The notes under the pieces were generated by a model, which worked only from the letters and a program-made list of their open reading frames with translations, searched no databases and was not told where the DNA came from. Source: Octopus sinensis (taxonomy: Eukaryota). Taken from it: a stretch of 64,000 nucleotides of DNA. The first letter of the stretch is position 1. Each line of letters begins with the position of its first letter. Location of the stretch: contig NC_043012.1 of NCBI RefSeq assembly GCF_006345805.1, forward strand, positions 7,502,001 to 7,566,000, in the 5' to 3' direction. This document shows positions 11,401-64,000 of the stretch, piece after piece. Position numbers and translations under genes: made by a program.

Positions 11401-11417
11401 TTTGTGTTTATACTTAC

Positions 11418-11619
11418 GGGAGACCATTCTCCGGCATACCATCGAGGACAAATATCAGTGTTACAAGATTTGTATTCCGAAGGTTGCAGCTGCTTACAGA
11501 ATTGATCTTCTACCCATCGTGCTTGACCGGAAGGTCCGTATTCCATACAACTTACTTCTCTCAGACTGGTCCCTCCACCACAAGTCATGGTGCAAGGCTG
11601 CCATTCTTGTGCCTCCCAC
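11418..11619 (-). CDS. Exon of ADAMTSL1/3-like gene, TSP1 repeat (RWEAQEWQPCTMTCGGGTSLREVSC...CNTDICPRWYAGEWSP)
   Basis: Acceptor ccaattccag, donor GTAAGT; 202 bp, phase 2 in and phase 0 out. WxxWxxCxxTCGGG motif, close to ADAMTSL1 RWEATPWTACSSSCGGGIQSRAVSC...CPKWLAQEWSP. Confidence 0.93.
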
Positions 11620-16645: not shown

Positions 16646-17039
16646 TCTTTATATATAAAAGTGAAGTTGTGTGTCTGTCTCCTACGATTTAGATTCCTAA
16701 CTACTCCCACATTTTGCGATGCAGTTTAACCAAAACCGGGTATCTTATAGTCGTGATTCATATCGAGCCCTTCTGGGTATTAGCGCGCGTCTACGATGAG
16801 TCTACGATTAAAAAAAAAAATTACCATCATTTTTTCCATTTTAATGCATTTTTTCGCTAGTATATAAGGGAAGTAACTCTCTAAAACTGTCTACGATGAG
16901 TCAACGATTTAAAAAAAAATTTACCATAATTTTTTTTCCATTTTTAATGCATTTTTTGCTATTTTTTGGCTATAACTCTAAAAATGCTTATATAGTTATT
17001 TCCCTTACAAACCCGAGCAACGCCGGGCGATACTGCTAG
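16646..17039 (+). mobile_element. Non-autonomous Helitron (~394 bp)
   Basis: Starts A|TC, ends CCCGAGCAACGCCGGG...CTAG|T; AT insertion site, no TSD. Confidence 0.85.
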
Positions 17040-17709
17040 TATATATATATATATAAACTTCGAGAGCTTACACGCATCCCCTTCCTCCCCCTCCCCCCTT
17101 TTTTCATTTTTCTTTTCTTTTGTTCCTTTTCCCTTACTTTTTTTTTCTTTTATTCTTTTTATTTTTTATTCTATTTTTTTTTCATTTTTTATTTTTATTT
17201 TTTTTGTTCTTTTCTTCCCTTTTACGATCCCTCTTGATCGAAAACCTACGCCACCCCCTTTTTTTCATCCCCCAAAAGAAAAGCTCTACCTTGTAACTTG
17301 TCCCATCTGTGTGCAGCCCTGTGTGGCCAATAAAGAAACTTATCTCACAGAAAATAGCACTGTTAGATAAGGCACATATAACGTAGAGTGCTTTTAATGC
17401 ATTTGGACTCTTTTTCAGGCGGCGGCATAGTGGGTCCCACTCACTACGTTCTGGTATCCCTCCGCACTCTCTCTCTCTCTCCGCTCTCTCATAAACAAGC
17501 TTCACTGTGTCGGCTGATGTTTTCTCCATAGAGGGAGAAAAACCAAAAAAATTCATTACAAAGACAAAATGAAATGACGTCCACTAAAAATGAGTAACAA
17601 ACTCACCAGTCGACGGTAAAACACTCATCTTCTACGATGGTATAAATTTCAAAAATAAATGCAACGGTTCTCGTTGATTTATATTTGTTGTGTTTACAAA
17701 AATTGGAAA

Positions 17710-22258: not shown

Positions 22259-22358
22259 NNNNNNNNNNNNNNNNNNNNNNNNNNNNNNNNNNNNNNNNNN
22301 NNNNNNNNNNNNNNNNNNNNNNNNNNNNNNNNNNNNNNNNNNNNNNNNNNNNNNNNNN
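22259..22358. other. Assembly gap (100 N)
   Basis: Run of exactly 100 N, typical of a placeholder of unknown size. Confidence 1.
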
Positions 22359-25264: not shown

Positions 25265-25565
25265 TCTTTATATATAAAAGTGAAGTTGTGTGCTGTCTGT
25301 CTCCTACGATTTAGATTCCTAACTACTCCCACATTTTGCGGTGCAGTGTAACCAAAAGCGGGTATCTTATAGTCGTGATTCATATCGAGCCCTTCTGGGT
25401 ATTAGCGCGCGTCTACGATGAGTCTACGATTTAAAAAAAATTTACCATAATTTTTTCCCATTTTTAATGCAATTTTTTGCTATTATATAAGGGAAGTAAC
25501 TCTCTAAAAATGCTTATATAGTTTTTTCCCTTAAAAACCCGAGCAACGCCGGGCGATACTGCTAG
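25265..25565 (+). mobile_element. Non-autonomous Helitron, shorter variant (301 bp)
   Basis: A|TC...CTAG|T termini; lacks one internal duplicated segment present in the other copies. Confidence 0.85.
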
Positions 25566-25703
25566 TCTCATATAAGTTACCTACAATTGTTAATACTAAC
25601 AATTTATGATTTTAGATTCAGCTGCAATTTTTACATCGATATTAATGTCACGAGATCAAGTTGTTACGTTTACAATGCCGTTATTTATATCCAATTGTTT
25701 TTA

Positions 25704-48694: not shown

Positions 48695-49140
48695 TACACA
48701 CACACACACACATACACACACACACACACCACACCCACACACACACACCACACACACACACTCGCACACACATACACACACACACACACATAAGTATGTA
48801 TGTATATTATACATAAACGCACAATTATTCATCTGCATGTATACGTATGTATATATTATACGTGTGTACACACATACACACAAACACACACAAATGTATA
48901 CAAAATGTATTTCATATATGTCTATATATATGTATATTTATGTGCGCGTGTGTATATGCATGTATGTATATATATATATATTATATAATATATATATATA
49001 TATATAATATATTATGATATATATATATAATATACATATATATCATATATATATTATATATATGCATGTACACACATTCACATATTTTGCGTGTATGTAT
49101 ATACTGTATTGCTGTTGTGTATATATATAATATAATAATC

Positions 49141-49171
<31 letters not shown>

Positions 49172-49592
49172 GAGATAATTAATATATATATATTATACAT
49201 TGTATGTTTGCATGTTTGTGTACCCATATACATGCATGTATGCATGTGTGTGTGTGTGTGTGTTGTGTGTGTGTGTGTGTGAGTATACTTACACATGTGA
49301 GTGTGATTGTGCGAGGTCAGAGATCTGATAAGCAGAGCCCTATTACTAAGTAACCCTGTAAACCAATACAACCTGTGCACGTTCGAGCGCCAGTGGCGAC
49401 CCAACTCCGTATGGGGTGGGGATGACATTTTAAACACCCAGCTGGATGAAAACTGCGAAACTAGTCAAAGGACAGATGATATCAAGTCAATAAACCGTCA
49501 TCCAATATTTTGACATAACTGTATGAGCGTGATTATACGTGTAATAAGTAAATGCACGCGAAAAAGGATCCTTTTGTTTGAAATCCGCAATA

Positions 49593-50221
49593 CAGTGATC
49601 CCTCGCTACTTTCGCGGATCAACTATCGCGGATTCATGTCTTCGCGGATTTTTTAAATATGTATATGAACGCCTAAAATTTTTCATTAAATCCATTAAAA
49701 TATTAATAATTAATAATAAATATTATTTCCTAGTCTAGGAACGACAAAACAAGCGTAAAATAGCAAACAGCATATACAGGGATATTTGAACTTAAGACGG
49801 GCTGTGATTGGTGCAATGGAGAGAGGCGACGAATCTCGGCTTTCTATTTTGTAATCTGGCCTGTGTAACAGTAACAATCTTTATTTTTTTTAAATCTTAA
49901 TTTATCGACCCCGAAGGATGAAGGCAAAGTCGACCTCGGCGGATTTGAACCCACAACGTAACGACGAGGAAATACCTATTTCTTTATTACCCACAACGTA
50001 AACACAGAGGGGACAAACAAGACTACAGGTATTAAGTCGATTACATCGACCCCAGTGCGAACTGGTACTTAATTTATCGCCCACGAAAGGATTAAAGGCA
50101 GTCGACCTCGGCGGAATTTGAACTCATTTCGCGACCGAAATACTTGCATTTCGCCCGACGTGCTAACGTTTCTTCATCTCGCCTCGGAACCAATCTACCA
50201 CGTATAATCGAGGGATCACTG
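49593..50221. mobile_element. pogo/Tigger-like MITE with a nested family 1 SINE (about 49895-50185)
   Basis: TIRs CAGTGATCCCTCG / CGAGGGATCACTG, TA TSDs at 49591-49592 and 50222-50223. Confidence 0.82.
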
Positions 50222-50852
50222 TATTTCGTGGTCTCTGGTCATTTTGTACTCTTTGCATCATTTTTGTTTAAAGACTGTTGAATAGCTTCAGATATGTTGT
50301 GAGAGGTTCGCATGAGGCATAATCTCGTTTGTTACCTTCAAATTTGATTAAATTGTTGTTGTTTTTTTCTTTTTTTACTTCTTTGATTTTGACTTGTTTC
50401 GATCTTGGATTGAGGCCATACTGGAGGAACACCGACCTGAAACGTCAATCCGAACAAATCGACCACTAGTACTTGTTAGAAATTAAAGTCTGGTGCTTAG
50501 GTGCTTATTTTATCGGGGTTTTTGTTTTTGGCGGGGGGTGTTTTTGCTTTTACTGAACCGCTAGATTACGAGGACGAAAACAAACATTTACCGATCGTCA
50601 AGCAGTTGTGGAGTACAAACACAATCACGAAGAGACGCACACACACATACGTATATATGTATATTTGCATAGATGTGTAAATGTGTGTGTGTGTGTGTGC
50701 GTGTGTGTGTGTGTGTGTGTATGTGTGTTGTGTGTGTGTGTGTGTGTGTGATATTTTAATATAATCTGTGTAAAGATCTTATAGCGTGCGTTTCAAAGCT
50801 CCTTTCTAGTATCGGCCACCAAGTGCTGTCATTCTCTGGGACTTCTATCACT

Positions 50853-50989
50853 GGATAAAATGCATGCCGGATAAAATGCACGCCGGATAAAATGCATGCC
50901 GGATAAAATGCATGCCGGATAAAATGCATGCCGATAAAATGCATGCCGAATAAAATGCATGCCGGATAAAATGCATGCCGGATAAAATG
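50853..50989. repeat. 16-bp tandem repeat GGATAAAATGCATGCC, about 8.5 copies
   Basis: Directly visible array with minor variants. Confidence 0.95.
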
Positions 50990-51482
50990 GTGAGCGCCTT
51001 ATGATTCGAATTCAAATACCCGCAGGTTCGACTTTCGTCTTTCAGAGTCGATGAAATAAGTATTAGTTTAGCACTAAGGACCAAGGTCGATATAATCGAC
51101 TCTTCCCTACCCCGAAAAACCTCAGGTCCTCTGCATATAATAGAAAGTATGTGTGTGTGTGTGTATTCTTTTATACGTTTCAGCTCTAGAGCTGTAGCTA
51201 TGCTAGGGTACGGTCAGCGAAAATATACGACAAAATATCAGTGCCTCGGGTAAAGTTCGAACTCACAACCTCCGCATTCTTCATCCGTAACTCACACAGC
51301 GAAGGTACTGTGTATAAGTGCGGAATGCTAACTGATTGTGCCACTGGGACACATTATTTAAAATAGTTCGATTCGGCTCCTTGCGACTTAAAGTTTCGCG
51401 GGTCTCTGACATAAGATATGGAAGCCAAAGCAAACTTTTTAAATAATACATGTGTTGAATGACTTTTTCTTTCATTTTTCCA

Positions 51483-51546
<64 letters not shown>

Positions 51547-51571
51547 TACACACACATATATAGATACATAC

Positions 51572-51619
<48 letters not shown>

Positions 51620-51826
51620 ATATATGTATATATACATACACATATACATACGTATATATGTATATATATATGCATATATATATGCATATATAATGTACAT
51701 ATATATGTATATATATTTATGTATGTATATACATATATATGTGTGTATATATATGTATATATATATTGTGTGTATATATATGTATGTATGTATATATATA
51801 TATGCATATATGTATATTATACATAT

Positions 51827-51894
<68 letters not shown>

Positions 51895-52607
51895 TATATA
51901 ATATATATATATACATACTATATACATATACTCAATATAAATACCGTTAATAAGATAGGCTGTTTATAGCCATGACACATTTTTAGTCAAATTTCGAAAT
52001 TTTTCAAAAATTTAAAACCTATATTAACGGGTAGGACCAATTTGACGAAAGAATGAGCAGGAGTCCGGTAGCGAACCCGTGTCGTCGTCATTTTTGCGCA
52101 TGTGCGTAAATTGGCGAAATTTTACACTTTGGGGCAGATATCGTCAAATTGATGTCATGATAGCTTGTGCGAAAAAATGCCTAAATTTTGCTTGAGAAAT
52201 AAAATGCTCTCTCTTACCTAATCAAAATGTCGGGGATTTAAAACAACGAATTGAATTAGTAAGTTTTAGCAAATCGAAACAATTCGCATTGGAATGAAGA
52301 ATTAGCAAACGCTAAATAGATTACCGTTAATAAGCTCTGTCTGTGTATATCCATGAAACATTTCTCGTCAAATTTCGGCATTTTTTTGTCCAAATTGATG
52401 TCACGATGGCGAGCGCGAAAAATGCCGGAAATTTACGATTTTTGAAAAATCGATGTTGATTAAAAATCGATACTGATCAAATACCAATTTTTTACAAAAT
52501 TCCAAGTGCGAAAGTGACCGCATGGGCATAAGCCACGCACGTGGGTCAAGTTTCATCAAGGTTTCGGAAGAGTTAAAGTAACAAATTCACAAAGACACAA
52601 ACTTGCC

Positions 52608-53973: not shown

Positions 53974-54207
53974 TGATAGATAGATATATACATACATACA
54001 TATAAATGACGCAGCACAGTTATTTAGAAAGCAAGTCTGGACACGCTTCTTTTATAGCAATAACGGTCCATCAGCGATCGGGTATAGGATGGCGAATATT
54101 TGATTCTGCCTGAGTGCCTGTCGGTAGAGACATAGAATCATAGGCGCACGCGCTCACACATACACGCATACATACATACATATGTGTGTGTATGTGTGTA
54201 TGTATAT

Positions 54208-54263
<56 letters not shown>

Positions 54264-54471
54264 TTGTAAAAAATGAAGTTCGAAAATGCTGCTGTATTAT
54301 ATAATTTTTAATTTTTATATATACATTATAACATGTTTCAGTTCCTGAAATGAACCTTATCAAAAAAAGTTATATATAAAAAAAGATAGCTCATGCCGTC
54401 AAACACAAGAAATTCATTTATAATACACAACGGAGTCAGACATCTTAGAGTTCATGTATAGTTGATATATA

Positions 54472-54620
54472 GACGTCATCAACTTGTTGACCAATCAGAA
54501 TCGGGTCTGACCCTTAGCTGTATCGTATGTATCAGGGTCAGATTTGCACGAAAGAATTTTTTTCCTTTTTTACTAAGGCATATTTCCGTCAGAGTGAGTG
54601 TCTGTTTGAAGCAGCGGCCG
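54472..54620 (+). promoter_or_regulatory. Possible promoter (CRE-like, CCAAT box, short inverted repeat) upstream of the SAMHD1-like cluster
   Basis: GACGTCA at 54472-54478, CCAAT at 54491-54495, TCTGACCCT/AGGGTCAGA inverted pair at 54506-54542, then a CpG-richer stretch. Motif evidence only. Confidence 0.25.
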
Positions 54621-54730
54621 TGGTGGAACCCCGCTTCTCCCTTTCGGAGGACTTATCTTTTGTTTTAGTATTCCTGGCCAGGGTGTTTAAACTTGGTCTA
54701 AATATATATATATATATATATATATCTATC

Positions 54731-54761
<31 letters not shown>

Positions 54762-54769
54762 TATATATA

Positions 54770-54806
<37 letters not shown>

Positions 54807-54828
54807 TATATATATATATATATATATA

Positions 54829-55228
54829 CTAGCAGTATCGCCCGGCGTTGCTCGGATTTGTAAGGGAAATAACTATAAAGCATTTTTAGAGAGTTATAGC
54901 CAAAAAATAGCAAAAAATGCATTAAAAATGGAAAAAAAAATTAAGGTAAATTTTTTATTAAATCGTTGACTCATCGTAGATATTTTTAGAGAGTTACTTC
55001 CCTCTATATTAAAAAAATATGCGTTAAAATGGAAAAAAATGATGTTAAATTATTTTTAAAATCGTAGACTCATCGTAAACGCGCGCTAATACCCAGAAGG
55101 GCTCGATATGAATCCCGACTATAAGATACCCGGTTTTGGTTAAACTGCATCGCAAAATGTGGGAGGAGTTAAGAATCTAAATCGTAGGAGACAGCCACTC
55201 ACACAACTTCACTTTTATATATATAACA
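54829..55228 (-). mobile_element. Non-autonomous Helitron H1
   Basis: Minus-strand 3' end is a GC-rich palindromic motif followed by CTAG|T. The 5' terminus reads TG instead of TC. Same family as 16646-17039. Confidence 0.85.
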
Positions 55229-55414
55229 TTACGCGCATACATTTACATACATCTATTCATTCACACAACACACCACACACACACAACACGCGCGCGCGCA
55301 TACATACACATGCACACACACACACACACATACATACACATGCACACGCGTATACATGTGTGAAACAACGGACTTTTCTGCGCAGAAGTTAAATCCGAAT
55401 GTGATACTTGTACG

Positions 55415-55463
<49 letters not shown>

Positions 55464-55464
55464 A

Positions 55465-55561
<97 letters not shown>

Positions 55562-55922
55562 GATATTATTAAATGTTATTGCTAGTGATGTTGAAGATGT
55601 AAAGTGAAAGTTGTGTTATAAGGAAGTGGGTTTAGTCGTCAGCTGATTGTTCATAGAGCAACGTAGTTCATTTCGTGTTCTTTCTACCAACCACGCAGAC
55701 ACTTTCTGATCGCTTATATTATTTGTAACACCAGATATTTCATGCCAATGCGACTGAGATCATTTCAAATCAAGTATTAGAAATATTCAACTGGACATAT
55801 CTGGATAATTTATATTTCTACTCCACATTACAAAACTAACAAAAACAACAGCAACGAAACGACCGCCAGCAACATAAACGACAAAGTAAATGTAAGTTAG
55901 ATATATTCTTAACAATTTTATA

Positions 55923-57947
55923 ATGTCTGAAACAGAAGGTAAACTTCCAAAGGATGAACCTCCAAAGGATAAATCTCCGGATAAATCTCCGGATAAATCT
56001 CCGGATAAATCTCCGGATAAATCTCCGGATAGGGTTTTTCACGACGCTATTCATGGATCCATGCAATTTTCACCAATCTGTGTTGATATTATTAATACAG
56101 TACAATTTCAGAGATTACGTAATATCAAACAACTAGGTTTGTGTTATTACGTTTATCCATCAGCTTCACATAATAGATTTGAGCATTGTCTGGGAACATG
56201 TCATCTAGCTGGGAAAATGATTCGCCATCTTAAACAGCAAAATCCCGATCTGGAAATATCTGATGAAGATATACTGTGTGTTGAAATCGCTGGTTTGTGT
56301 CATGATTTAGGACATGCGCCTTTTTCTCATGTCTTTCAAGAAATTATCAACGAGTGTCGCAATGGAGATGAAAAGTGGGAACATGAAGTTGCATCATGTG
56401 AAATGTTGGAGCATCTTTTTAAAAAGAACCCACATATAAAAGTTAAGCGTGATGAAATTGAATTCATAAAAGGTCTCATTACTGGTAAACCAATAAAAAC
56501 TGAGGAACAAAAATTTGAAAAAGAAAAAAATGTTCTCATTACTGGTGAATCAAAAAAAACTGAGAAAAAAAATTTAAGAAGAAAAAAACAATTTTTTTAC
56601 CAAATCGTCAACAATGCAGACTATAACATCGACGTTGATAAATGGGATTACCTGGCCAGAGATTCCCATTTGCTTGGCATTGGAACATCCTTTGATCACG
56701 AAAGAATGCTGAAAATGTCCAAAGTAATAGATGGTAAAATATGCTACAGAGACAAAACGCTTAAAAATTTCTATGATATGTTTTATTCACGATATCGACT
56801 ACATAACACGGTTTACCAACACAAAACTGTTCTCCTGCTTAATAAACTACTTGGCAAGGCTTTGAAATCCGCAGATGAACACCTGAAAATTTTCAAAAGA
56901 GTCGAAAATATGGAGGAATTTACTTATTTTACAGATAGTATTTTGGAGGAGATATTAAAGAATAAGGGCAATCAATCTCTCAAAGACTCGGAGAAATTTA
57001 CTTCTTTTATAGAGAGTATTTTGGAGGAGATATTAAAGAATAAGGACAATCAATCTCTCAAAGACTCGGAGAAATATACTTCTTTTATAGAGAGTATTTT
57101 GGGGGAGATATTAAAGAATAAGAGCAATCAATCTCTCAAAGACTCGGAGAAATTTACTTCTTTTATAGAGAGTATGTTGGAGGAGATATCAAAGGAGAAG
57201 GGCAATCAACCTCGCAAAAACTTGGAGACTATAATCAACCGGTCTTTTGAATACAAAGGGACCGTCACAGACACAATCACGGGCACAGTCACGGATATAT
57301 TCGAACTCGGAGATACGGAGGGAAATATCTTGTACCCAGCTGAGGGTACAAGAGATGACGTTGCAGCCCTGGAAAACATGGAGGACATTATCAATGGTAA
57401 AACCTTGGACACACCGGAGAGCAAAATGTGGAGAAATATCAAGGGTGAAATCAAGGCTAAAATCTCGGACACCCCGGGGAGCGAAATGCAGGGCAATATC
57501 CAGCGCAGAATCAATGGTACAATCTCGGAGACATCGGGAGAAAAAAAGATCGAGGGCACAATCGATGTTGAAATAGTGAGAAAATCGGAGAGCATAATGC
57601 AGTGGGATATCAAGGGCAAAATCAATGGTAAAATATCGGGCACATCGGAGAGCAAAATGCAGAGCAATATCAAGGGCGAAATCGAGGGTACCATCCAAAC
57701 AATAATAAACAGCAGAGACGAAGAATCAGAGCCGGTTATAGCCAATGAGACAGACGAGATCTGCATAGCCCGTTTTGACTATGGAGCTAAAGAAAAGAAC
57801 CCACTATTGAACATACCATTCTATAGAAGAATGGGAACTAAGTCAATGTACTTTAAACAGGAAGAACTGGAAGATATGCTTTTTCTGCCAAAGAAATTTA
57901 AAATGGAAACCGGACATTGTTTTGAATTTAAAAAAAAAAAACAATGA
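55923..57947 (+). CDS. SAMHD1: SAMHD1-like HD-domain dNTP triphosphohydrolase, copy 1 (674 aa, no SAM domain, internal repeat expansions)
   Basis: Uninterrupted ORF with motifs HDAIHG, FQRLRNIKQLG, SHNRFEH, CHDLGHAPFSH, WEHE, IDVDKWDYLARD, RYRLHNTVYQHK and DYGAKEKNP. The true start is uncertain because of an in-frame splice acceptor at 55934-55935. Confidence 0.95.
   Translation: MSETEGKLPKDEPPKDKSPDKSPDKSPDKSPDKSPDRVFHDAIHGSMQFSPICVDIINTVQFQRLRNIKQLGLCYYVYPSASHNRFEHCLGTCHLAGKMIRHLKQQNPDLEISDEDILCVEIAGLCHDLGHAPFSHVFQEIINECRNGDEKWEHEVASCEMLEHLFKKNPHIKVKRDEIEFIKGLITGKPIKTEEQKFEKEKNVLITGESKKTEKKNLRRKKQFFYQIVNNADYNIDVDKWDYLARDSHLLGIGTSFDHERMLKMSKVIDGKICYRDKTLKNFYDMFYSRYRLHNTVYQHKTVLLLNKLLGKALKSADEHLKIFKRVENMEEFTYFTDSILEEILKNKGNQSLKDSEKFTSFIESILEEILKNKDNQSLKDSEKYTSFIESILGEILKNKSNQSLKDSEKFTSFIESMLEEISKEKGNQPRKNLETIINRSFEYKGTVTDTITGTVTDIFELGDTEGNILYPAEGTRDDVAALENMEDIINGKTLDTPESKMWRNIKGEIKAKISDTPGSEMQGNIQRRINGTISETSGEKKIEGTIDVEIVRKSESIMQWDIKGKINGKISGTSESKMQSNIKGEIEGTIQTIINSRDEESEPVIANETDEICIARFDYGAKEKNPLLNIPFYRRMGTKSMYFKQEELEDMLFLPKKFKMETGHCFEFKKKKQ
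55968..56027 (+). repeat. Coding 12-bp repeat (GATAAATCTCCG)x5 encoding (DKSP)5
   Basis: Directly visible; absent from copy 2. Confidence 0.95.
56917..57213 (+). repeat. Coding 78-bp (26-aa) tandem repeat, about 3.8 copies, in copy 1
   Basis: Unit starts at 56917, 56995, 57073 and 57151; copy 2 has a single unit. Confidence 0.93.
57408..57698 (+). repeat. Coding ~60-bp (20-aa) degenerate repeat, 5 units (copy 2 has 4 units at 61645-61875)
   Basis: Units 60/60/51/60/60 bp with consensus DT(P/S)ESKMxxNIKGxIxGxIS. Confidence 0.85.
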
Positions 57948-58496
57948 AGACAACATTCAAGAGAAAAATCAATAACAAAAAATCAGATTGATTATAACCA
58001 ATGAAAGAAAACAAAACCATGGACGCAGATTGAGATAAGTAATGAAACTTGATAAAACTTTAATATTATAAAAATACATTGAAACTATTGAAAGATTGAT
58101 AGGTCAAAAATACTAAATGGACAATATTCTCTATCTAAATTAAAAGAACTTTTTGATGGGAAATTTTTACTTTTAAGAAACTCTCAAAATTAAAAAAAAA
58201 AAAAAAACATATATTTCCTTACTTCTAAATTGAATCCTCCCATTGAGTCACGTTCGAAACATATGAGAAACATTTATTCTTTACTTAAAATTTGGTAAGA
58301 ATTAATTTTTTTTTTAAATATATTGAAACTATTTCAAAATTCAAAGACTAAAAATAATATGCGAACAACAATTTTTTCCTAAATTAACTTTTTTTTTACT
58401 TTTCTATTAGAAATATTCTTTGTTTACCAAATAATGTATTTCTTACATTCAAAAATTATAACCTCTCACTGAGTCATGTGTGTATGTGTATGTATG

Positions 58497-58539
<43 letters not shown>

Positions 58540-58545
<6 letters not shown>

Positions 58546-58770
58546 TTTGCGAGATTTTTTATGTGAAATCGTGTGTTGAAACATATATTGTTGTATTTAG
58601 GAATGGTCATTTTGCTAGTTTAGCCAATAAAAACACACGCACTATATATTTGGTTTTACTTTGCTTCATCGTTATTTATTTTTTACATTAATCTTAATCT
58701 TATTTCGGCCAGAGTTCTTTCGTCACACTCCTGTGACCGCATCACTGGTCCTTTGCTTTCTTCTTTCTTA
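58540..58770 (-). mobile_element. Penelope-like relic with a decayed hammerhead-like motif (duplicated at about 62720-62950)
   Basis: Minus strand CCA-GTGATGC-G-GTCAC(AGGAGT)GTGAC-GAAA-GAACTC-TGG; the core is mutated. Confidence 0.4.
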
Positions 58771-59016
58771 TTTGTGTGTCTCTCCTTACTAACCGTCAAC
58801 CATTTTGTATTTCTATTGTATGTGTCTTCATTTGCGCATGCGTATATCTCTATGTGCGTCTATGCTTAGTTAGTGTGTGTGTGTGTATATGTATGGGGGG
58901 GGAAACGCCTGTAATATTTGTATCTCCTGTTTATATACGTTCGTGTAATTTGTTTTTGTTTTTGTTTATTCTTATTTTGTTCATGTGTTTATACCCACTT
59001 ATTATTATTATTATTA

Positions 59017-59071
<55 letters not shown>

Positions 59072-59336
59072 CATTATTATTATTATTATGCATGTATGTA
59101 TATATGTATAACAATAATAATAGTAATAATAGTAATAAATATAAATAAAATTTTTAAAAAATAAAAATAAAAATAAATGAAATAAAAAATATATGTATAT
59201 AGTTATTTACTTCCATTTGTTTATTAGAAGGTTTGGAGATGATGTACAGGTATTTTATATTAGAAGAAATGAGGTACTCAGAATTCGGATGGTTTTATAT
59301 TTACAGATATTTATTTGTATATTACATGTTTTTATA

Positions 59337-59740
59337 CTAGCAGTATCGCCCGGCGTTGCTCGGGTTTGTAAGGGAAATAACTATATAAGCATTTTTAGAG
59401 TGTTATAGCCAGAAAAAAAAAAAAAAAAATGCATTAAAAATGGAAAAAAAATTAAGGTAAATTTTTTTTTTAAATCGTTGACACATCGTAGATATTTTTA
59501 GAGAGTTACTTCCCTCTATATTAAAAAAATATGCGTTAAAATGGAAAAAAATGATGTTAAATTATTTTTAAAATCGTAGACTCATCGTAGACGCGCGCTA
59601 ATACCCAGAAGGGCTCGATATGAATCCCGACTATAAGATACCCGGTTTTGGTTAAACTGCATCGCAAAATGTGGGAGGAGTTAAGAATCTAAATCGTAGG
59701 AGACAGCCACTCACACAACTTCACTTTTATATATATAACA
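59337..59740 (-). mobile_element. Non-autonomous Helitron H2 (chimera of H3-left and H1-right)
   Basis: Same family; diagnostic bases switch from H3-type to H1-type between about 59484 and 59516. Confidence 0.88.
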
Positions 59741-59769
59741 TTACGCGCATACATTTACATACATCTATT

Positions 59770-59814
<45 letters not shown>

Positions 59815-59934
59815 GCATACATACACATGCACACACACACACACACATATACATACACATGCACACGCGTATACATGTGTGAAAACAACGGACTTTTCTG
59901 CGCAGAAGTTAAATCCGAATGTGATACTTGTACG

Positions 59935-60024
<90 letters not shown>

Positions 60025-60025
60025 A

Positions 60026-60057
<32 letters not shown>

Positions 60058-60058
60058 A

Positions 60059-60115
<57 letters not shown>

Positions 60116-60525
60116 ACTACTACTACTACTACTACTACTACTCGATATTATTAAATGTTATTGATAGTGATGTTGAAGATGTAAAGTGAAAGTTGTGTTA
60201 TAAGGAAGTGGGTTTAGTCGTTAGCTGATTTTTCATAGAGCAACGTAGTTCATTTCGTGTTCTTTCTACCAACCACGCAGACACTTTCTGATCGCTTATA
60301 TTATTTGTAACACCAGATATTTCATGCCAATGCGACTGAGATCATTTCAAATCAAGTATTAGAAATATTCAACTGGACATATCTGGATAATTTATATTTC
60401 TACTCCACATTACAAAACTAACAAACACAACAGCAACGAAACGACCACCGGGAACATAAACGACAAAGTGAATGTAAGTTAGATATATTCTTAACAATTT
60501 TATAATTGCTGACGCAGAGGTTATA

Positions 60526-62124
60526 ATGGCTATGGCAAACAAAACACGTTCGGTTCGGGTTTTTCACGACGCTATTCATGGATCCATGCAATTTTCACCA
60601 ATCTGTGTTGATATTATTAATACAGTACAATTTCAGAGATTACGTAATATCAAACAACTAGGTTTGTGTTATTACGTTTATCCATCAGCTTCACATAATA
60701 GATTTGAGCATTGTCTGGGAACATGTCATCTAGCTGGGAAAATGATTCGCCATCTTAAGCAGCAAGATTCCGATCTGAAAATATCTGATGAAGATACACG
60801 TTGTGTTGAAATCGCTGGTTTGTGTCATGATTTAGGACATGCGCCTTTTTCTCATGTCTTTCAAGAAATTATCAATGAGTATCGCAAGGAAAAAAACCTT
60901 AAAAAGTGGGAACATGAAGAGGCATCATGTAAAATGTTGCAGCAGATTATTGACAAGAACTCATGTATTAAAGACAAACTTGGTGACAAGTCTGATGAAA
61001 ATATTTGTTTCATAAAAAGTCTCATTACTGGTAAACCAGGAGATCTTAAGAAACCAAATTTTTTTTACCAAATCGTCAACAATGCAGACTATAACATCGA
61101 CGTTGATAAATGGGATTACCTGGCCAGAGATTCCCATTTGCTTGGCATTGGAACATCCTTTGATCACGAAAGAATGCTGAAAATGTCCAAAGTAATAGAT
61201 GGTAAAATATGCTACAGAGACAAAACGCTTAAAAATTTCTATGATATGTTTTATTCACGATATCGACTACATAACACGGTTTACCAACACAAAACTGTTC
61301 TCCTGCTTAATAAACTACTTGGCAAGGCTTTGAAATCCGCAGATAAACACCTGAAAATTTTCAAAAGAGTCGAAAATATGGAGGAATTTACTTATTTTAC
61401 AGATAGTATTTTGGAGGAGATGTTAAAGAAGGGCAATGAACCTCTCGAACACTTGGAGACTATAATCAACCGGTCTTTTCACTACAAAGGGACCGTCACA
61501 GACATAATCAAGGGCACATTCACGAGCCCAGTCACGGACATATTCGAACTCGGAGATACGGAGGGAAAAATCTTGGACCCAATTGAGGGTACAAGAGAAG
61601 ACGATGCAGTCCAGGAAAAAATAAATATATATGGTGAAAGCTTGGACACACCGGAGAGCGACATGCAGGACAATATCCAGCGCAGAATCAGTGGTACAAT
61701 CACGAAGAAATCGGAAAAAAAAAAGATCGAGGGCACAATCGATGTTAAAAAATTTGACCAAGGGGATGGCAAAATGCGGTGGGATATCGATGGCACAATC
61801 AATGGTAAAATATTGGGCACATCGGAGAGCAAAAGGCAGAGAAATATCGATGGCAAAATCAATGGTACCATCGAAACAATAATAAACAGCAGAGACGAAG
61901 AATCAGAGCCGGTTATAGCCAATAAGACAGACGAGATCTGCATAGCCCGTTTTGACTATGGAGCTAAAGAAAAGAACCCACTATTGAACATACCATTCTA
62001 TAGAATAATGGGAAATAAGCCAATGTACTTTAAACAGGAAGAACTGGAAGATATGCTTTTTCTGCCAAAGAAATTTAAAATGGAAACCGGACATTGTTTT
62101 GAATTAAAAAAAAAAAAACAATGA
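60526..62124 (+). CDS. SAMHD1: SAMHD1-like HD-domain dNTP triphosphohydrolase, copy 2 (532 aa, no SAM domain)
   Basis: Same catalytic motifs as copy 1 with long nucleotide-identical blocks; different N-terminus and fewer internal repeats. Confidence 0.95.
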   Translation: MAMANKTRSVRVFHDAIHGSMQFSPICVDIINTVQFQRLRNIKQLGLCYYVYPSASHNRFEHCLGTCHLAGKMIRHLKQQDSDLKISDEDTRCVEIAGLCHDLGHAPFSHVFQEIINEYRKEKNLKKWEHEEASCKMLQQIIDKNSCIKDKLGDKSDENICFIKSLITGKPGDLKKPNFFYQIVNNADYNIDVDKWDYLARDSHLLGIGTSFDHERMLKMSKVIDGKICYRDKTLKNFYDMFYSRYRLHNTVYQHKTVLLLNKLLGKALKSADKHLKIFKRVENMEEFTYFTDSILEEMLKKGNEPLEHLETIINRSFHYKGTVTDIIKGTFTSPVTDIFELGDTEGKILDPIEGTREDDAVQEKINIYGESLDTPESDMQDNIQRRISGTITKKSEKKKIEGTIDVKKFDQGDGKMRWDIDGTINGKILGTSESKRQRNIDGKINGTIETIINSRDEESEPVIANKTDEICIARFDYGAKEKNPLLNIPFYRIMGNKPMYFKQEELEDMLFLPKKFKMETGHCFELKKKKQ

Positions 62125-62675
62125 AGACAACATTCAAGAGAAAAATCAATAACAAAAAATCAGATTGATTATAACCAATGAAAGAAAACAAAACCATGGA
62201 CGCAGATTGAGATAAGTAATGAAACTTGATAAAACTTTAATATTATAAAAATACATTGAAACTATTGAAAGATTGATAGGTCAAAAATACTAAATGGACA
62301 ATATTCTCTATCTAAATTAAAAGAACTTTTTGATGGGAAATTTTTACTTTTAAGAAACTCTCAAAATTAAAAAAAAAAAAAAACATATATTTCCTTACTT
62401 CTAAATTGAATCCTCCCATTGAGTCACGTTCGAAACATATGAGAAACATTTATTCTTTACTTAAAATTTGGTAAGAATTAAATTTTTTTAAAATATATTG
62501 AAACTATTTCAAAATTCAAAGACTAAAAATAATATGCGAACAACAATTTTTTTCCTAAATTAACTTTTTTTTTTTACTTTTCTATTAGAAATATTCTTTG
62601 TTTACCAAATAAATGTATTTCTTACATTCAAAAATTATAACCTCTCACTGAGTCATGTGTGTATGTGTATGTATG

Positions 62676-62722
<47 letters not shown>

Positions 62723-63195
62723 TTTGCGAGATTTTTTATGTGAAATCGTGTGTTGAAACATATATTGTTGTATTTAGGAATGGTCATTTTGCTAGTTTAG
62801 CCAATAAAAACACACGCACTATATATTTGGTGTTACTTTGCTTCAGCGTTATTTATTTTTTACATTAATCTTAATCTTATTTCGGCCAGAGTTCATTCGT
62901 CACACTCCTGTGACCGCATCACTGGTCCTTTGCTTTCTTCTTTCTTATTTGTGTGTCTCTCCTTACTAACCGTCAACCATTTTGTATTTCTATTGTATGT
63001 GTCTTCATTTGCGCATGCGTATATCTCTATGTGCGTCTATGTTTAGTTAGTGTGTGTGTGTGTATATGTATGGGGGGGGGAAAACGCCTGTAATATTTGT
63101 ATCTCCTGTTTATATACGTTCGTGTAATTTGTTTTTGTTTTTGTTTATTCTTATTTTGTTCATGTGTTTATACCCACTTATTATTATTATTATTA

Positions 63196-63259
<64 letters not shown>

Positions 63260-63528
63260 CATTATTATTATTATTATTATGCATGTATGTATATATGTAT
63301 AACAATAATAATAGTAATAATAGTAATAAATATAAATAAAATTTTTAAAAAATAAAAATAAAAATAAATGAAATAAAAAATATATGTATATAGTTATTTA
63401 CTTCCATTTGTTTATTAGAAGGTTTGGAGATGATGTACAGGTATTTTATATTAGAAGAAATGAGGTACTCAGAAATTCGGATGGTTTTATATTTACAGAT
63501 ATTTATTTGTATATTACATGTTTTTATA

Positions 63529-63926
63529 CTAGCAGTATCGCCCGGCGTTGCTCGGGTTTGTAAGGGAAATAACTATATAAGCATTTTTAGAGTGTTATAG
63601 CCAGAAAATAGCAAAAAAATGCATTAAAAATGGAAAAAAAATTAAGGTAAATTTTTTTTTTAAATCGTTGACACATCGTAGATATTTTTATAGAGTTACT
63701 TCCCTTATATAATAGCGAAAAAATGCATTAAAATGGAAAAATATGATGGTAAATTTTTTTTAAATCGTGGACTCATCGTAGACGCGCGCTAATACCCAGA
63801 AGGGCTCGATATGAATCACGACTATAAGATACCCGGTTTTGGTTAAACTGCATCGCAAAATGTGGGAGCAGTTAGGAATCTAAATCGTAGGAGACAGACA
63901 CACAACTTCACTTTTATATATAAAGA
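63529..63926 (-). mobile_element. Non-autonomous Helitron H3
   Basis: Intact A|TCTTTATATATAAAAG 5' end and CTAG|T 3' end on the minus strand; the right flank is unique sequence. Confidence 0.88.
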
Positions 63927-64000
63927 TATAAGCCACGTAGTTATATACACATACTTTGTTATATACACATTCTTAAAAGAAAATGTTATTTTGAACACAA

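What the first reader, a model, noticed from the sequence alone, without database searches (positions are those of the whole stretch)
55923..62124. Paralogs differ almost only by amino-acid changes while flanks are near-identical: signature of diversifying selection
Seen: the ~200 nt from RVFHD and the ~280-nt DVDKWDY-YQHK block are nucleotide-identical. Differences cluster in the N-terminus, inter-motif loops and the insert. In the last ~245 coding nt I count five substitutions, all non-synonymous (E>K, R>I, T>N, S>P, F>L). In the QQNPDLEISDEDIL region N>D, P>S, E>K, I>T and L>R outnumber one silent change. The 3' non-coding flanks differ mainly in homopolymer length. Known: vertebrate SAMHD1 is an antiviral and anti-retroelement dNTPase under virus-driven positive selection. 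Inference: a cephalopod innate-immunity arms race, or two old balanced alleles placed in tandem.
Basis: partly seen in the sequence, partly recalled or inferred. Interest (0 to 1): 0.8.

Follow-up and report, generated by a model that had tools for sequence, protein, structure and literature searches.

The report
Hypervariable octopus SAMHD1-like gene pair
Two side-by-side copies of an octopus relative of the antiviral enzyme SAMHD1 share almost identical surrounding DNA yet differ by about 120 amino-acid-changing mutations and several in-frame repeat gains, a pattern that selection for protein diversity explains and decay or error does not.

Summary
The window (Octopus vulgaris-like) carries two intronless SAMHD1-like ORFs, A (55923-57947, 674 aa) and B (60526-62124, 532 aa), in a ~4.5-kb tandem duplication.

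- **Divergence:** non-repetitive flanks differ by 0.55%, the coding sequence by 9.3%.
- **Selection:** dN/dS is 1.9-2.6 by counting and 2.4 by likelihood (p=0.003). It is about 11 (p=6e-5) in a repeat-built insert in the C-terminal lobe.
- **Not decay:** all coding indels are multiples of 3 and no stop codon arose.
- **Family-wide:** every pair in a wider Octopus family has dN/dS of 2 or more. Relatives are detected as protein in skin mucus, including a peptide from the insert.

A simple "diverged after duplication" model does not fit. The backbone is young, but the variable segments are as diverged as the split from a paralogous array on another chromosome. The repeat at the A/B junction is a clean chimera of the right and left flanking repeats, as unequal crossover would leave. 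The public O. vulgaris assembly has only B at this site.

Best reading: two pre-existing divergent variants of a gene under diversifying selection were stacked in tandem. The immune role is inferred, not shown.

The parts
55923..57947 (+). Copy A: intronless SAMHD1-like ORF, 674 aa, no SAM domain
   Evidence: Not present in the protein database.
60526..62124 (+). Copy B: intronless SAMHD1-like ORF, 532 aa
   Evidence: It differs by 2 nt (both non-synonymous) from O. vulgaris CAI9733954.1. AlphaFold2 model pLDDT 80.7; SAMHD1 fold TM 0.66-0.78.
54828..55223 (+). Left flanking copy (TE1) of a dispersed ~400-bp repeat
   Evidence: Further copies at 17013-17040(-) and 25539-25566(-).
59336..59735 (+). 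Junction repeat (TE2): 5' part of right-repeat type (59330-59483), 3' part of left-repeat type (from 59501); crossover interval 59484-59500
63528..63922 (+). Right flanking copy (TE3) of the dispersed repeat
56032..56233 (+). Identical block 1 (= B 60557-60758), RVFHD to the HD helix; includes the R164/H167 equivalents
56592..56876 (+). Identical block 2 (= B 61060-61344), DVDKWDY to YQHK; includes the D311, R366 and H370 equivalents
55967..56031 (+). A-only N-terminal 12-nt repeat, 5.4 copies at 100% identity, encoding (DKSP)n
56474..56588 (+). A-only 60-nt tandem duplication inside the surface loop equivalent to human SAMHD1 ~273-292
56912..57228 (+). A-only 78-nt repeat, 4.1 copies (26-aa SILEEILKNK... 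units)
57198..57698 (+). Hypervariable insert of A; 60-nt (20-aa) repeats, 5.2 copies, at 57390-57690
   Evidence: It replaces human SAMHD1 ~447-500.
61429..61875 (+). Hypervariable insert of B; 60-nt repeats, 2.4 copies, at 61722-61867, one unit fewer than A. Predicted as long beta strands
57948..59317 (+). 3' flank of unit 1 (homologous to 62125-63510): 6/1161 masked substitutions against unit 2
55224..55922 (+). 5' flank of unit 1 (homologous to 59736-60525): 0.7% masked divergence, rising to 5.9% in the last 85 bp before the ATG

Best explanation
A and B are two pre-existing, strongly diverged variants of one fast-evolving, intronless SAMHD1-like gene. The gene belongs to a family so far seen only in Octopus.

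How they came to be adjacent: an unequal crossover between the dispersed repeat copies on either side of an originally single gene placed them in tandem. This locus therefore varies in copy number between haplotypes.

What the protein is: it keeps the full catalytic set of a dNTP triphosphohydrolase. By inference it hydrolyses dNTPs as SAMHD1 does.

Where it varies: in three surface modules.
- The N-terminal tail.
- The loop equivalent to human residues ~273-292.
- A beta-strand repeat arm that replaces human residues ~447-500.

These modules change by amino-acid-altering substitutions and by in-frame gain and loss of 12-, 60- and 78-nt units, while the reading frame is preserved. This is positive, diversifying selection on interaction surfaces. 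Recombination or gene conversion keeps the catalytic backbone and the flanks young.

Shown: the anatomy, dN/dS above 1, frame preservation, the mosaic of segment ages, the chimeric junction, the single-copy public haplotype, the fold, and translation of the insert in close paralogs.

Inferred: the enzymatic activity, and that the variable surfaces are contact sites in a conflict with viruses or retroelements.
For: **Selection**
- Counting-method dN/dS is 1.9-2.6 overall and about 6 in the insert.
- By likelihood, omega is 2.4 (p=0.003) overall and about 11 (p=6e-5) in the insert plus C-terminus.
- dN of 0.10 compares with flank divergence of 0.0055.
- All 8 coding indels are multiples of 3, against 1 of 13 in the flanks. 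No stop codon arose in 133 changes (p about 0.001-0.003).
- Every family pair has omega of 2.0-4.0. The family-wide minimum is 256 non-synonymous against 21 synonymous changes.

**Mosaic ages**
- The ratio of A-B divergence to the divergence between the two arrays is about 0.2-0.3 in the flanks, conserved blocks and C-terminus. It is about 1 in var1, the loops and the insert.
- Branch-specific versus shared changes run 0.36 in the flanks and 3.1 in the variable segments.

**Tandem join**
- The junction repeat is right-type up to 59483 and left-type from 59501.
- The public assembly has left repeat, B, right repeat, with no second copy within 10 kb.
- In the 3' flank A, B and public B are equidistant (0.43-0.52%). 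In the CDS, A-B is 9.3% and B versus public B is 0.12%.

**Enzyme**
- The equivalents of H167, H206, D207, H210, H215, H233, D311, R366 and H370 are conserved.
- The fold matches SAMHD1.

**Expression**
- Insert-bearing paralogs are found in the O. vulgaris skin-mucus proteome, including the insert peptide GTIQTIINSR (PMC11431876).
Against: - Only three haplotype sequences of this locus exist (A, B, public B), and there are no reads. The tandem arrangement cannot be verified here, and no allele frequencies are known.
- Synonymous counts are small (2.7 in the insert, 12-15 overall), so omega has wide limits. The insert was singled out after looking at the data.
- The insert is built of 20-aa repeats, and some changes recur at equivalent repeat positions (K,K / D,D / E,E). 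Substitutions are therefore not fully independent, and p-values are somewhat optimistic.
- Neither A nor B has direct expression evidence. B was not found in the stored proteome text.
- Several copies of the other array are truncated in the insert in the public assembly.
- An old tandem pair homogenised by gene conversion gives much the same mosaic.
Confidence: 0.6

Rival explanations
1. Young paralogs in an arms race. One gene was duplicated recently as two identical copies, and positive selection on new point mutations then drove them apart.
For: - dN/dS exceeds 1.
- Flank divergence of 0.55% sets a recent date.
- With the other array as outgroup, the B branch carries 51.7 non-synonymous against 3.3 synonymous changes, and A carries 22.5 against 1.5.
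Against: - It needs about 120 replacements plus 8 in-frame indels in the time that gave 0.55% neutral change, an effective omega near 18 overall and 30 in the insert.
- The equally fast C-terminus shows the expected small A-B share: 4 branch-specific against 27 shared changes. The insert and loops show 87 against 28.
- B and public B differ by only 2 nt in the CDS, although their flanks are as far apart as the A and B flanks. B would have to have stopped changing.
- Synonymous divergence in the variable segments (about 6-8%) is higher than in the flanks.
Confidence: 0.12
2. Assembly artefact. A and B are the two alleles of one heterozygous single-copy locus, and the assembler stacked them in tandem through the flanking repeats.
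For: - The public O. vulgaris assembly is single-copy here.
- Protein A is in no database.
- A-B flank divergence equals allelic divergence.
Against: - The join is seamless, with no N run. The only gap in the window is at 22259-22358.
- The join runs through a repeat whose two parents differ at about 40 positions, with a single clean switch. That is what unequal crossover gives.
- Falsely duplicated haplotypes usually sit at contig ends next to gaps (general knowledge, not tested here).
- Even if true, the excess of amino-acid change would stand, as a difference between alleles.
Confidence: 0.18
3. Relaxed constraint. One or both copies are decaying, and the differences reflect repeat instability and mutation bias in AT-rich low-complexity DNA rather than selection.
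For: - The insert is repetitive and no Pfam domain matches it.
- Differences in the insert are spread almost evenly over codon positions, 22:20:16.
- Copies of the other array are truncated in the insert.
Against: - Omega is significantly above 1, not merely equal to 1.
- Both ORFs are intact over 532 and 674 codons, all coding indels are in frame, and no stop arose.
- Third-position changes are nearly all the amino-acid-changing kind.
- Divergence is 17 times that of the flanks.
- The insert is translated in paralogs.
Confidence: 0.05
4. Old tandem paralogs, or ectopic donors, with concerted evolution. The duplication is ancient, or variable cassettes were copied in from other family members. 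Gene conversion repeatedly homogenised everything except the segments where selection keeps differences.
For: - The mosaic of young and old segments.
- A large family exists, with an array on OX597824.1 and short-type clusters.
- A's loops are closer to the other array (10-12%) than to B (20%).
Against: - No sampled paralog is a near-identical donor for any A or B cassette.
- The star-like 3' flank among A, B and public B is expected for alleles and would be a coincidence under conversion.
- The single-copy haplotype would have to be a secondary deletion.
- This rival changes the history, not the conclusion that amino-acid change is favoured.
Confidence: 0.15

Closest known systems
Vertebrate SAMHD1 (dNTP triphosphohydrolase; restriction factor targeted by lentiviral Vpx/Vpr)
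   Same: - HD domain, the same metal-binding and catalytic residues, and the same fold.
- In primates, positive selection is concentrated in terminal regions bound by the viral antagonist while the catalytic core is conserved (my knowledge of Lim et al. 2012 and Laguette et al. 2012; not checked here). The layout here is analogous.
   Different: - No SAM domain, and intronless.
- About 40% identity over the core only.
- An N at the D137 position of allosteric site 1.
- A 150-300-residue repeat-built insert replaces human ~447-500.
- It is multi-copy in tandem arrays, and omega exceeds 1 over most of the protein rather than at a few sites.
Copy-number-variable, positively selected immune gene clusters (primate TRIM5/APOBEC3, MHC, plant NLR clusters)
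   Same: - Tandem arrays and unequal crossover at flanking repeats.
- A conserved scaffold with hypervariable specificity segments.
- Divergent variants kept side by side.
   Different: - The scaffold here is an enzyme of nucleotide metabolism.
- The variable module is a novel repeat arm.
- No ligand or pathogen is known.
- Evidence comes from three haplotypes only.
Conotoxin-type focal hypervariability in molluscs
   Same: Very high dN/dS confined to one segment, with near-identical neighbouring coding and non-coding sequence (my knowledge; not tested here).
   Different: Conotoxins are short, secreted, multi-exon peptides. Here the hypervariable part is an insert in a large intracellular-type enzyme and changes partly by in-frame repeat gain and loss.
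Other Octopus SAMHD1-like paralogs (array on OX597824.1; O. sinensis XP_029657943.1; short-type clusters)
   Same: - The same gene family.
- The array members share the insert and the 5' and 3' unit flanks, at 2-8% flank divergence.
- Omega is 2-4 against A and B.
   Different: - A and B sit on another chromosome as a 1- or 2-copy locus.
- Their N-termini, loops and insert are as different from each other as from the array.
- Short-type members lack the insert, and several read CHNLGHGPFSY at the HD motif.

Membership tests
SAMHD1-type HD-domain dNTP triphosphohydrolase | HD domain recognised by a curated profile | tested here: met
   PF01966 at E=1e-12 (A) and 1e-11 (B). PF19276 scores just above its cut-off.
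SAMHD1-type HD-domain dNTP triphosphohydrolase | Metal-binding and catalytic residues (human H167, H206, D207, D311; H210, H215, H233, R164, R366, H370) | tested here: met
   All are present in A and B when aligned to human SAMHD1 chains and to 40 family members.
SAMHD1-type HD-domain dNTP triphosphohydrolase | SAMHD1 catalytic-core fold | tested here: met
   The AlphaFold2 model of B has core pLDDT above 90. Foldseek top hits are all SAMHD1: E about 1e-28, TM 0.63-0.67 (query) and 0.71-0.78 (target).
SAMHD1-type HD-domain dNTP triphosphohydrolase | N-terminal SAM domain | tested here: not met
   No SAM domain hit. The ORFs start 10-36 residues before the core. Many invertebrate 'SAMHD1-like' entries also lack it.
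SAMHD1-type HD-domain dNTP triphosphohydrolase | Allosteric nucleotide sites (human K116, V117, N119, D137, Q142, R145; R333, R352, K354, N358, K523) | tested here: inconclusive
   - The Q142, R145, V117, R333, R352, K354, N358 and K523 equivalents are kept.
- K116>R, N119>H and D137>N are changed.
- R451 is not alignable.
SAMHD1-type HD-domain dNTP triphosphohydrolase | dNTP hydrolysis and tetramerisation | not testable with these tools
   Needs recombinant protein.
Gene under positive (diversifying) selection | dN/dS significantly above 1 | tested here: met
   Likelihood omega 2.4, p=0.003. For the insert, omega is about 11, p=6e-5. Counting-method values for all family pairs are 2.0-4.0.
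Gene under positive (diversifying) selection | Replacement rate above the local neutral rate, with the reading frame maintained | tested here: met
   - Non-synonymous 121/1253 against flanks 10/1810.
- Coding indels are all in frame.
- No stop codons arose.
Gene under positive (diversifying) selection | Population or multi-species tests (McDonald-Kreitman, site models on orthologs) | not tested
   Only a tree-free family count was done: 256 non-synonymous against 21 synonymous. No population sample or true orthologs were available.
Tandem duplication by unequal crossover between flanking repeats (copy-number variant) | Direct repeats at both ends and a chimeric repeat at the junction | tested here: met
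   The junction repeat carries right-type states at 13 of 15 informative sites up to 59483, then left-type states throughout.
Tandem duplication by unequal crossover between flanking repeats (copy-number variant) | A single-copy haplotype with the parental structure | tested here: met
   GCA_951406725.2 OX597828.1 has left repeat, B, right repeat, with no second copy within 10 kb.
Tandem duplication by unequal crossover between flanking repeats (copy-number variant) | Read-level support for the junction | not testable with these tools
   No reads are available.
Long-lived balanced (possibly trans-species) polymorphism | Deep coalescence at silent sites next to the selected sites | tested here: inconclusive
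   - Synonymous divergence is about 6-8% in the variable segments, against 0.55% in the flanks, but it rests on 8-11 changes.
- Four-fold sites in unchanged codons differ at 1/140.
Long-lived balanced (possibly trans-species) polymorphism | Both variant classes present in a sister species or at intermediate frequency | not tested
   The O. sinensis proteins found belong to the other array or to the short type, not to this locus.

The most novel reading that the evidence does not exclude
Octopuses carry a lineage-specific family of SAMHD1-type enzymes in which a novel beta-strand repeat arm works as a hypervariable recognition or decoy surface. The arm is diversified by replacement substitutions and repeat-unit shuffling, and different versions are stacked by unequal crossover. 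This would make it an invertebrate restriction-factor system with MHC- or TRIM5-like allelic and copy-number diversity. A more remote possibility is that a locally targeted mutational mechanism feeds it.
Probability: 0.25. Interest if true: 0.8.

Novelty: new variant of a known kind. Interest (0 to 1): 0.6.

Why it matters
SAMHD1 is a textbook example of a host enzyme caught in conflict with viruses, but the evidence comes almost entirely from vertebrates. Here an invertebrate has multiplied the enzyme, dropped the SAM domain and grafted a repeat-built, rapidly changing arm onto an intact catalytic core. Copy number also differs between haplotypes.

If the selective agent is a virus or retroelement, this gives a defined, testable locus for antiviral or anti-retroelement defence in cephalopods, whose innate immunity is poorly known and whose genomes are rich in retroelements.

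It is also a practical warning for annotation. One of the two variants is absent from the public reference and from all protein databases searched.

Tried and rejected
- **O. sinensis XP_029657943.1 (L001) as ortholog.** I first treated it as the ortholog and outgroup. Its flanks are 0.2-1.1% from the O. vulgaris array on OX597824.1 and 2-8% from A and B, so it is a paralog. I kept it only as a family outgroup.
- **O. sinensis P0003 locus (L005).** I checked it as a possible ortholog because its chromosome is of similar size. It is a separate cluster of short-type copies with no synteny.
- **Copy A elsewhere.** A protein search with A gave no hit better than B at 62%.
- **Gene conversion as the cause of the identical blocks.** It is not needed. 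At 0.55% background divergence, runs of 202 and 285 identical nt are unremarkable (expected 1.1 and 1.6 differences). The excess in the variable segments is what is unusual.
- **Frame error or compensated frameshifts.** I looked for these as a source of false replacements. Apart from one 2+43-nt gap pair in the loop region that together make 45 nt, all coding gaps in the DNA-level alignment are multiples of 3. The insert frame is confirmed by a peptide in paralogs.
- **Known domains and RNAs.** Pfam finds no domain in the insert; bactofilin and CoxG score below threshold. Rfam finds nothing in 54000-64000.
- **Literature.** Searches for SAMHD1 with octopus, cephalopod, mollusc or OsHV-1 found no evolutionary study of these genes.
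- **Last 85 codons.**

Full report
**1. What is there**

The 3' end of the window holds two long open reading frames on the + strand: A (55923-57947, 674 aa) and B (60526-62124, 532 aa). The surrounding DNA otherwise yields only low-complexity ORFs. Both match the Pfam HD domain and the HD-associated region.

B aligns to human SAMHD1 residues 114-446 and about 501-548. An AlphaFold2 model of B (mean pLDDT 80.7, core above 90) finds only SAMHD1 structures as top fold matches.

The catalytic residues of SAMHD1 are all present in both copies: the equivalents of R164, H167, H206, D207, H210, H215, H233, D311, R366 and H370. There is no SAM domain and no intron.

B differs at 2 of 1599 nt from the O. 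vulgaris protein CAI9733954.1 on chromosome OX597828.1. The DNA is therefore O. vulgaris or something extremely close, but not that assembly.

**2. The observation**

- identical runs of 202 and 285 nt;
- five differences in the last 248 coding nt, all non-synonymous;
- the N>D, P>S, E>K, I>T and L>R cluster.

The two genes lie in a tandem duplication of about 4.5 kb. BLAST identity of the flanks is only 95-96%, but that reflects microsatellite length. With microsatellites masked, the flanks differ at 10 of 1810 sites (0.55%). The aligned coding sequence differs at 148 of 1589 sites (9.3%).

**3. Is it selection?**

Over 521 alignable codons the counting method gives dN 0.098-0.104 and dS 0.039-0.052, a ratio of 1.9-2.6. 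A pairwise likelihood codon model gives omega 2.4, with omega=1 rejected at p=0.003.

The signal is concentrated in an insert in the C-terminal lobe:
- 55-61 non-synonymous against 2.7 synonymous changes;
- omega about 6 by counting and 11-14 by likelihood (p below 1e-4).

The core as a whole sits at omega near 1, because it mixes invariant blocks with hypervariable loops.

Relaxed constraint does not explain this:
- Under neutrality 74-79% of changes would be non-synonymous, against 88% observed overall and 95% in the insert.
- All eight coding indels are multiples of three, counting the adjacent 2-nt and 43-nt gaps in the loop region as one 45-nt event, against 1 of 13 in the flanks.
- None of 133 changes made a stop codon (p about 0.001-0.003).

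The reading frame of the insert is independently supported. A tryptic peptide from it, GTIQTIINSR, and many other peptides of close paralogs were identified in O. vulgaris skin mucus (PMC11431876).

Caveats:
- Synonymous counts are small.
- The insert was singled out after inspection.
- It is made of 20-aa repeats in which some changes recur at equivalent positions, so events are not fully independent.

**4. Anatomy of the differences**

A is longer because of three in-frame tandem repeats that B lacks:
- a perfect 12-nt repeat, 5.4 copies, at the N-terminus;
- a 60-nt duplication in the loop equivalent to human ~273-292;
- a 78-nt repeat, 4.1 copies.

The insert itself is an array of diverged 60-nt units, 5.2 copies in A and fewer in B. 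B has lost exactly one unit, and the remaining units align in register.

The insert replaces human residues ~447-500. It is predicted, at modest confidence (pLDDT 55-76), as long beta strands, with a disordered stretch at residues 336-383. No Pfam domain matches it.

**5. The family**

The closest proteins are Octopus-only. Insert-bearing copies form a tandem array on another O. vulgaris chromosome (OX597824.1, about 25.40-25.48 Mb, period about 7.3 kb). The O. sinensis protein XP_029657943.1 belongs to that array family and is not orthologous to A or B. Short-type copies without the insert form further clusters.

Every pairwise comparison among A, B and the array copies has whole-gene omega of 2.0-4.0. 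A tree-free count over seven copies gives at least 256 non-synonymous against 21 synonymous changes. Rapid protein evolution is thus a property of the family, not only of this pair.

**6. History of the pair**

Three results argue against simple divergence after a recent duplication.

(a) *Mosaic ages.*
- Relative to the divergence between the two arrays, A-B divergence is about 0.2-0.3 in the flanks, the conserved blocks and the fast-evolving C-terminus. It is about 1 or more in var1, the loops and the insert.
- Branch-specific versus shared changes run 16:45 in the flanks and 4:27 in the C-terminus, but 87:28 in the variable segments.

(b) *Haplotype comparison.*
- In the 3' flank, A, B and the public B are equidistant (0.43-0.52%).
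- In the CDS, B and public B differ at 2 sites, while A and B differ at 148.

(c) *Junction.*
- The units are bounded by a dispersed ~400-bp repeat with five copies in the window.
- The copy between A and B is a chimera. It carries right-repeat states up to 59483 and left-repeat states from 59501. This is the product expected from unequal crossover between the repeats flanking a single gene.
- The public O. vulgaris assembly has exactly that single-gene structure, carrying B, with no second copy within 10 kb.

The simplest account is that two already divergent variants were brought into tandem by an unequal exchange. The alternatives are:
- an old pair homogenised by gene conversion;
- cassettes imported from unsampled paralogs;
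- an assembler stacking two alleles.

The last cannot be excluded without reads. It is made less likely by the seamless, single-switch junction and by the absence of any gap nearby. Under every one of these histories the excess of amino-acid change remains.

**7. How it probably works**

*Shown:* an intact SAMHD1-type catalytic core with three hypervariable surface modules, frame-preserving length changes, copy-number variation, and protein-level expression of close paralogs in skin mucus.

*Inferred:*
- The protein hydrolyses dNTPs.
- The variable N-terminus, loop and repeat arm are contact surfaces in a conflict with viruses or retroelements. The analogy is primate SAMHD1, where the antagonist-binding termini are the selected parts (my knowledge, not tested here).
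- Stacking variants in tandem fixes a broader repertoire on one chromosome.

**8. Novelty**

I found no paper on the evolution of cephalopod SAMHD1-like genes in the searchable library. Positive selection and copy-number variation in restriction-factor-like families are well known. A SAMHD1 core carrying a repeat-built hypervariable arm, in tandem arrays, in a mollusc, is a new variant of that theme.

I score it 0.6. The case is well supported and testable, but it rests on three haplotypes and there is no functional evidence for an immune role.

Noticed in passing
L002 6089-7657 (public O. vulgaris haplotype); corresponds to window ~54250: A ~2.6-kb insertion with a 523-aa reverse-transcriptase ORF (Pfam RVT_1, E=8e-31). 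It is present upstream of B in the public assembly and absent from the window, so it is a retroelement insertion difference between the haplotypes.
   Followed up: partly
L003 2521-3828, 9785-11137, 17155-18675; L004 9785-11092, 17176-18696: Copies of the insert-bearing array on OX597824.1 are truncated inside the insert (435, 450 and 506 aa) in the public assembly. The O. sinensis relative is intact at 555 aa, and array peptides are seen in mucus. The truncations are either real pseudogenes or indel errors in repeats.
   Followed up: partly
P0003, P0004, P0008, P0016 (short-type Octopus paralogs; L005 cluster): Several short-type paralogs read CHNLGHGPFSY where A and B read CHDLGHAPFSH. These are the D207N and H215Y equivalents, so the proteins are probably catalytically inactive relatives.
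   Followed up: no
window 60619-60621 (B residue N32) and the same position in A and the array copies: All insert-bearing copies have N at the position of human D137 in allosteric site 1. The D137N mutant in PDB 6tx0 and 6txa was crystallised with XTP, whereas the wild-type entries 6txc and 6txe carry GTP. The octopus enzymes may use a different activator.
   Followed up: no
window 60559 and 61345 (B CDS positions 34 and 820): The only two differences between the window's B and the public B are both non-synonymous. One is V12I, at the human V117 position. The other is K274E, where public B agrees with A.
   Followed up: partly
window 57609-57690 and 61780-61867: Equivalent positions of two neighbouring 20-aa repeat units carry K,K in A, D,D in B and E,E in the other array. 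This suggests changes spread between repeat units within a gene.
   Followed up: no
window 11415-11588 (-): An ORF start matching a thrombospondin type-1 (TSP1_ADAMTS) domain (E=8e-8). It is probably an exon of an unrelated multi-exon gene.
   Followed up: partly
window 17013-17040 (-), 25539-25566 (-): Two further copies of the dispersed ~400-bp repeat that bounds the duplicated units. The element is unclassified and has no Rfam match.
   Followed up: partly
L002 18651-21362 vs window 49026-51930: Sequence about 7 kb downstream of B in the public assembly is 83-89% identical to sequence about 4 kb upstream of A in the window. This hints at an older, larger duplication around the locus.
   Followed up: no
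window 22259-22358: The only assembly gap in the window (100 N), far from the finding.
   Followed up: yes
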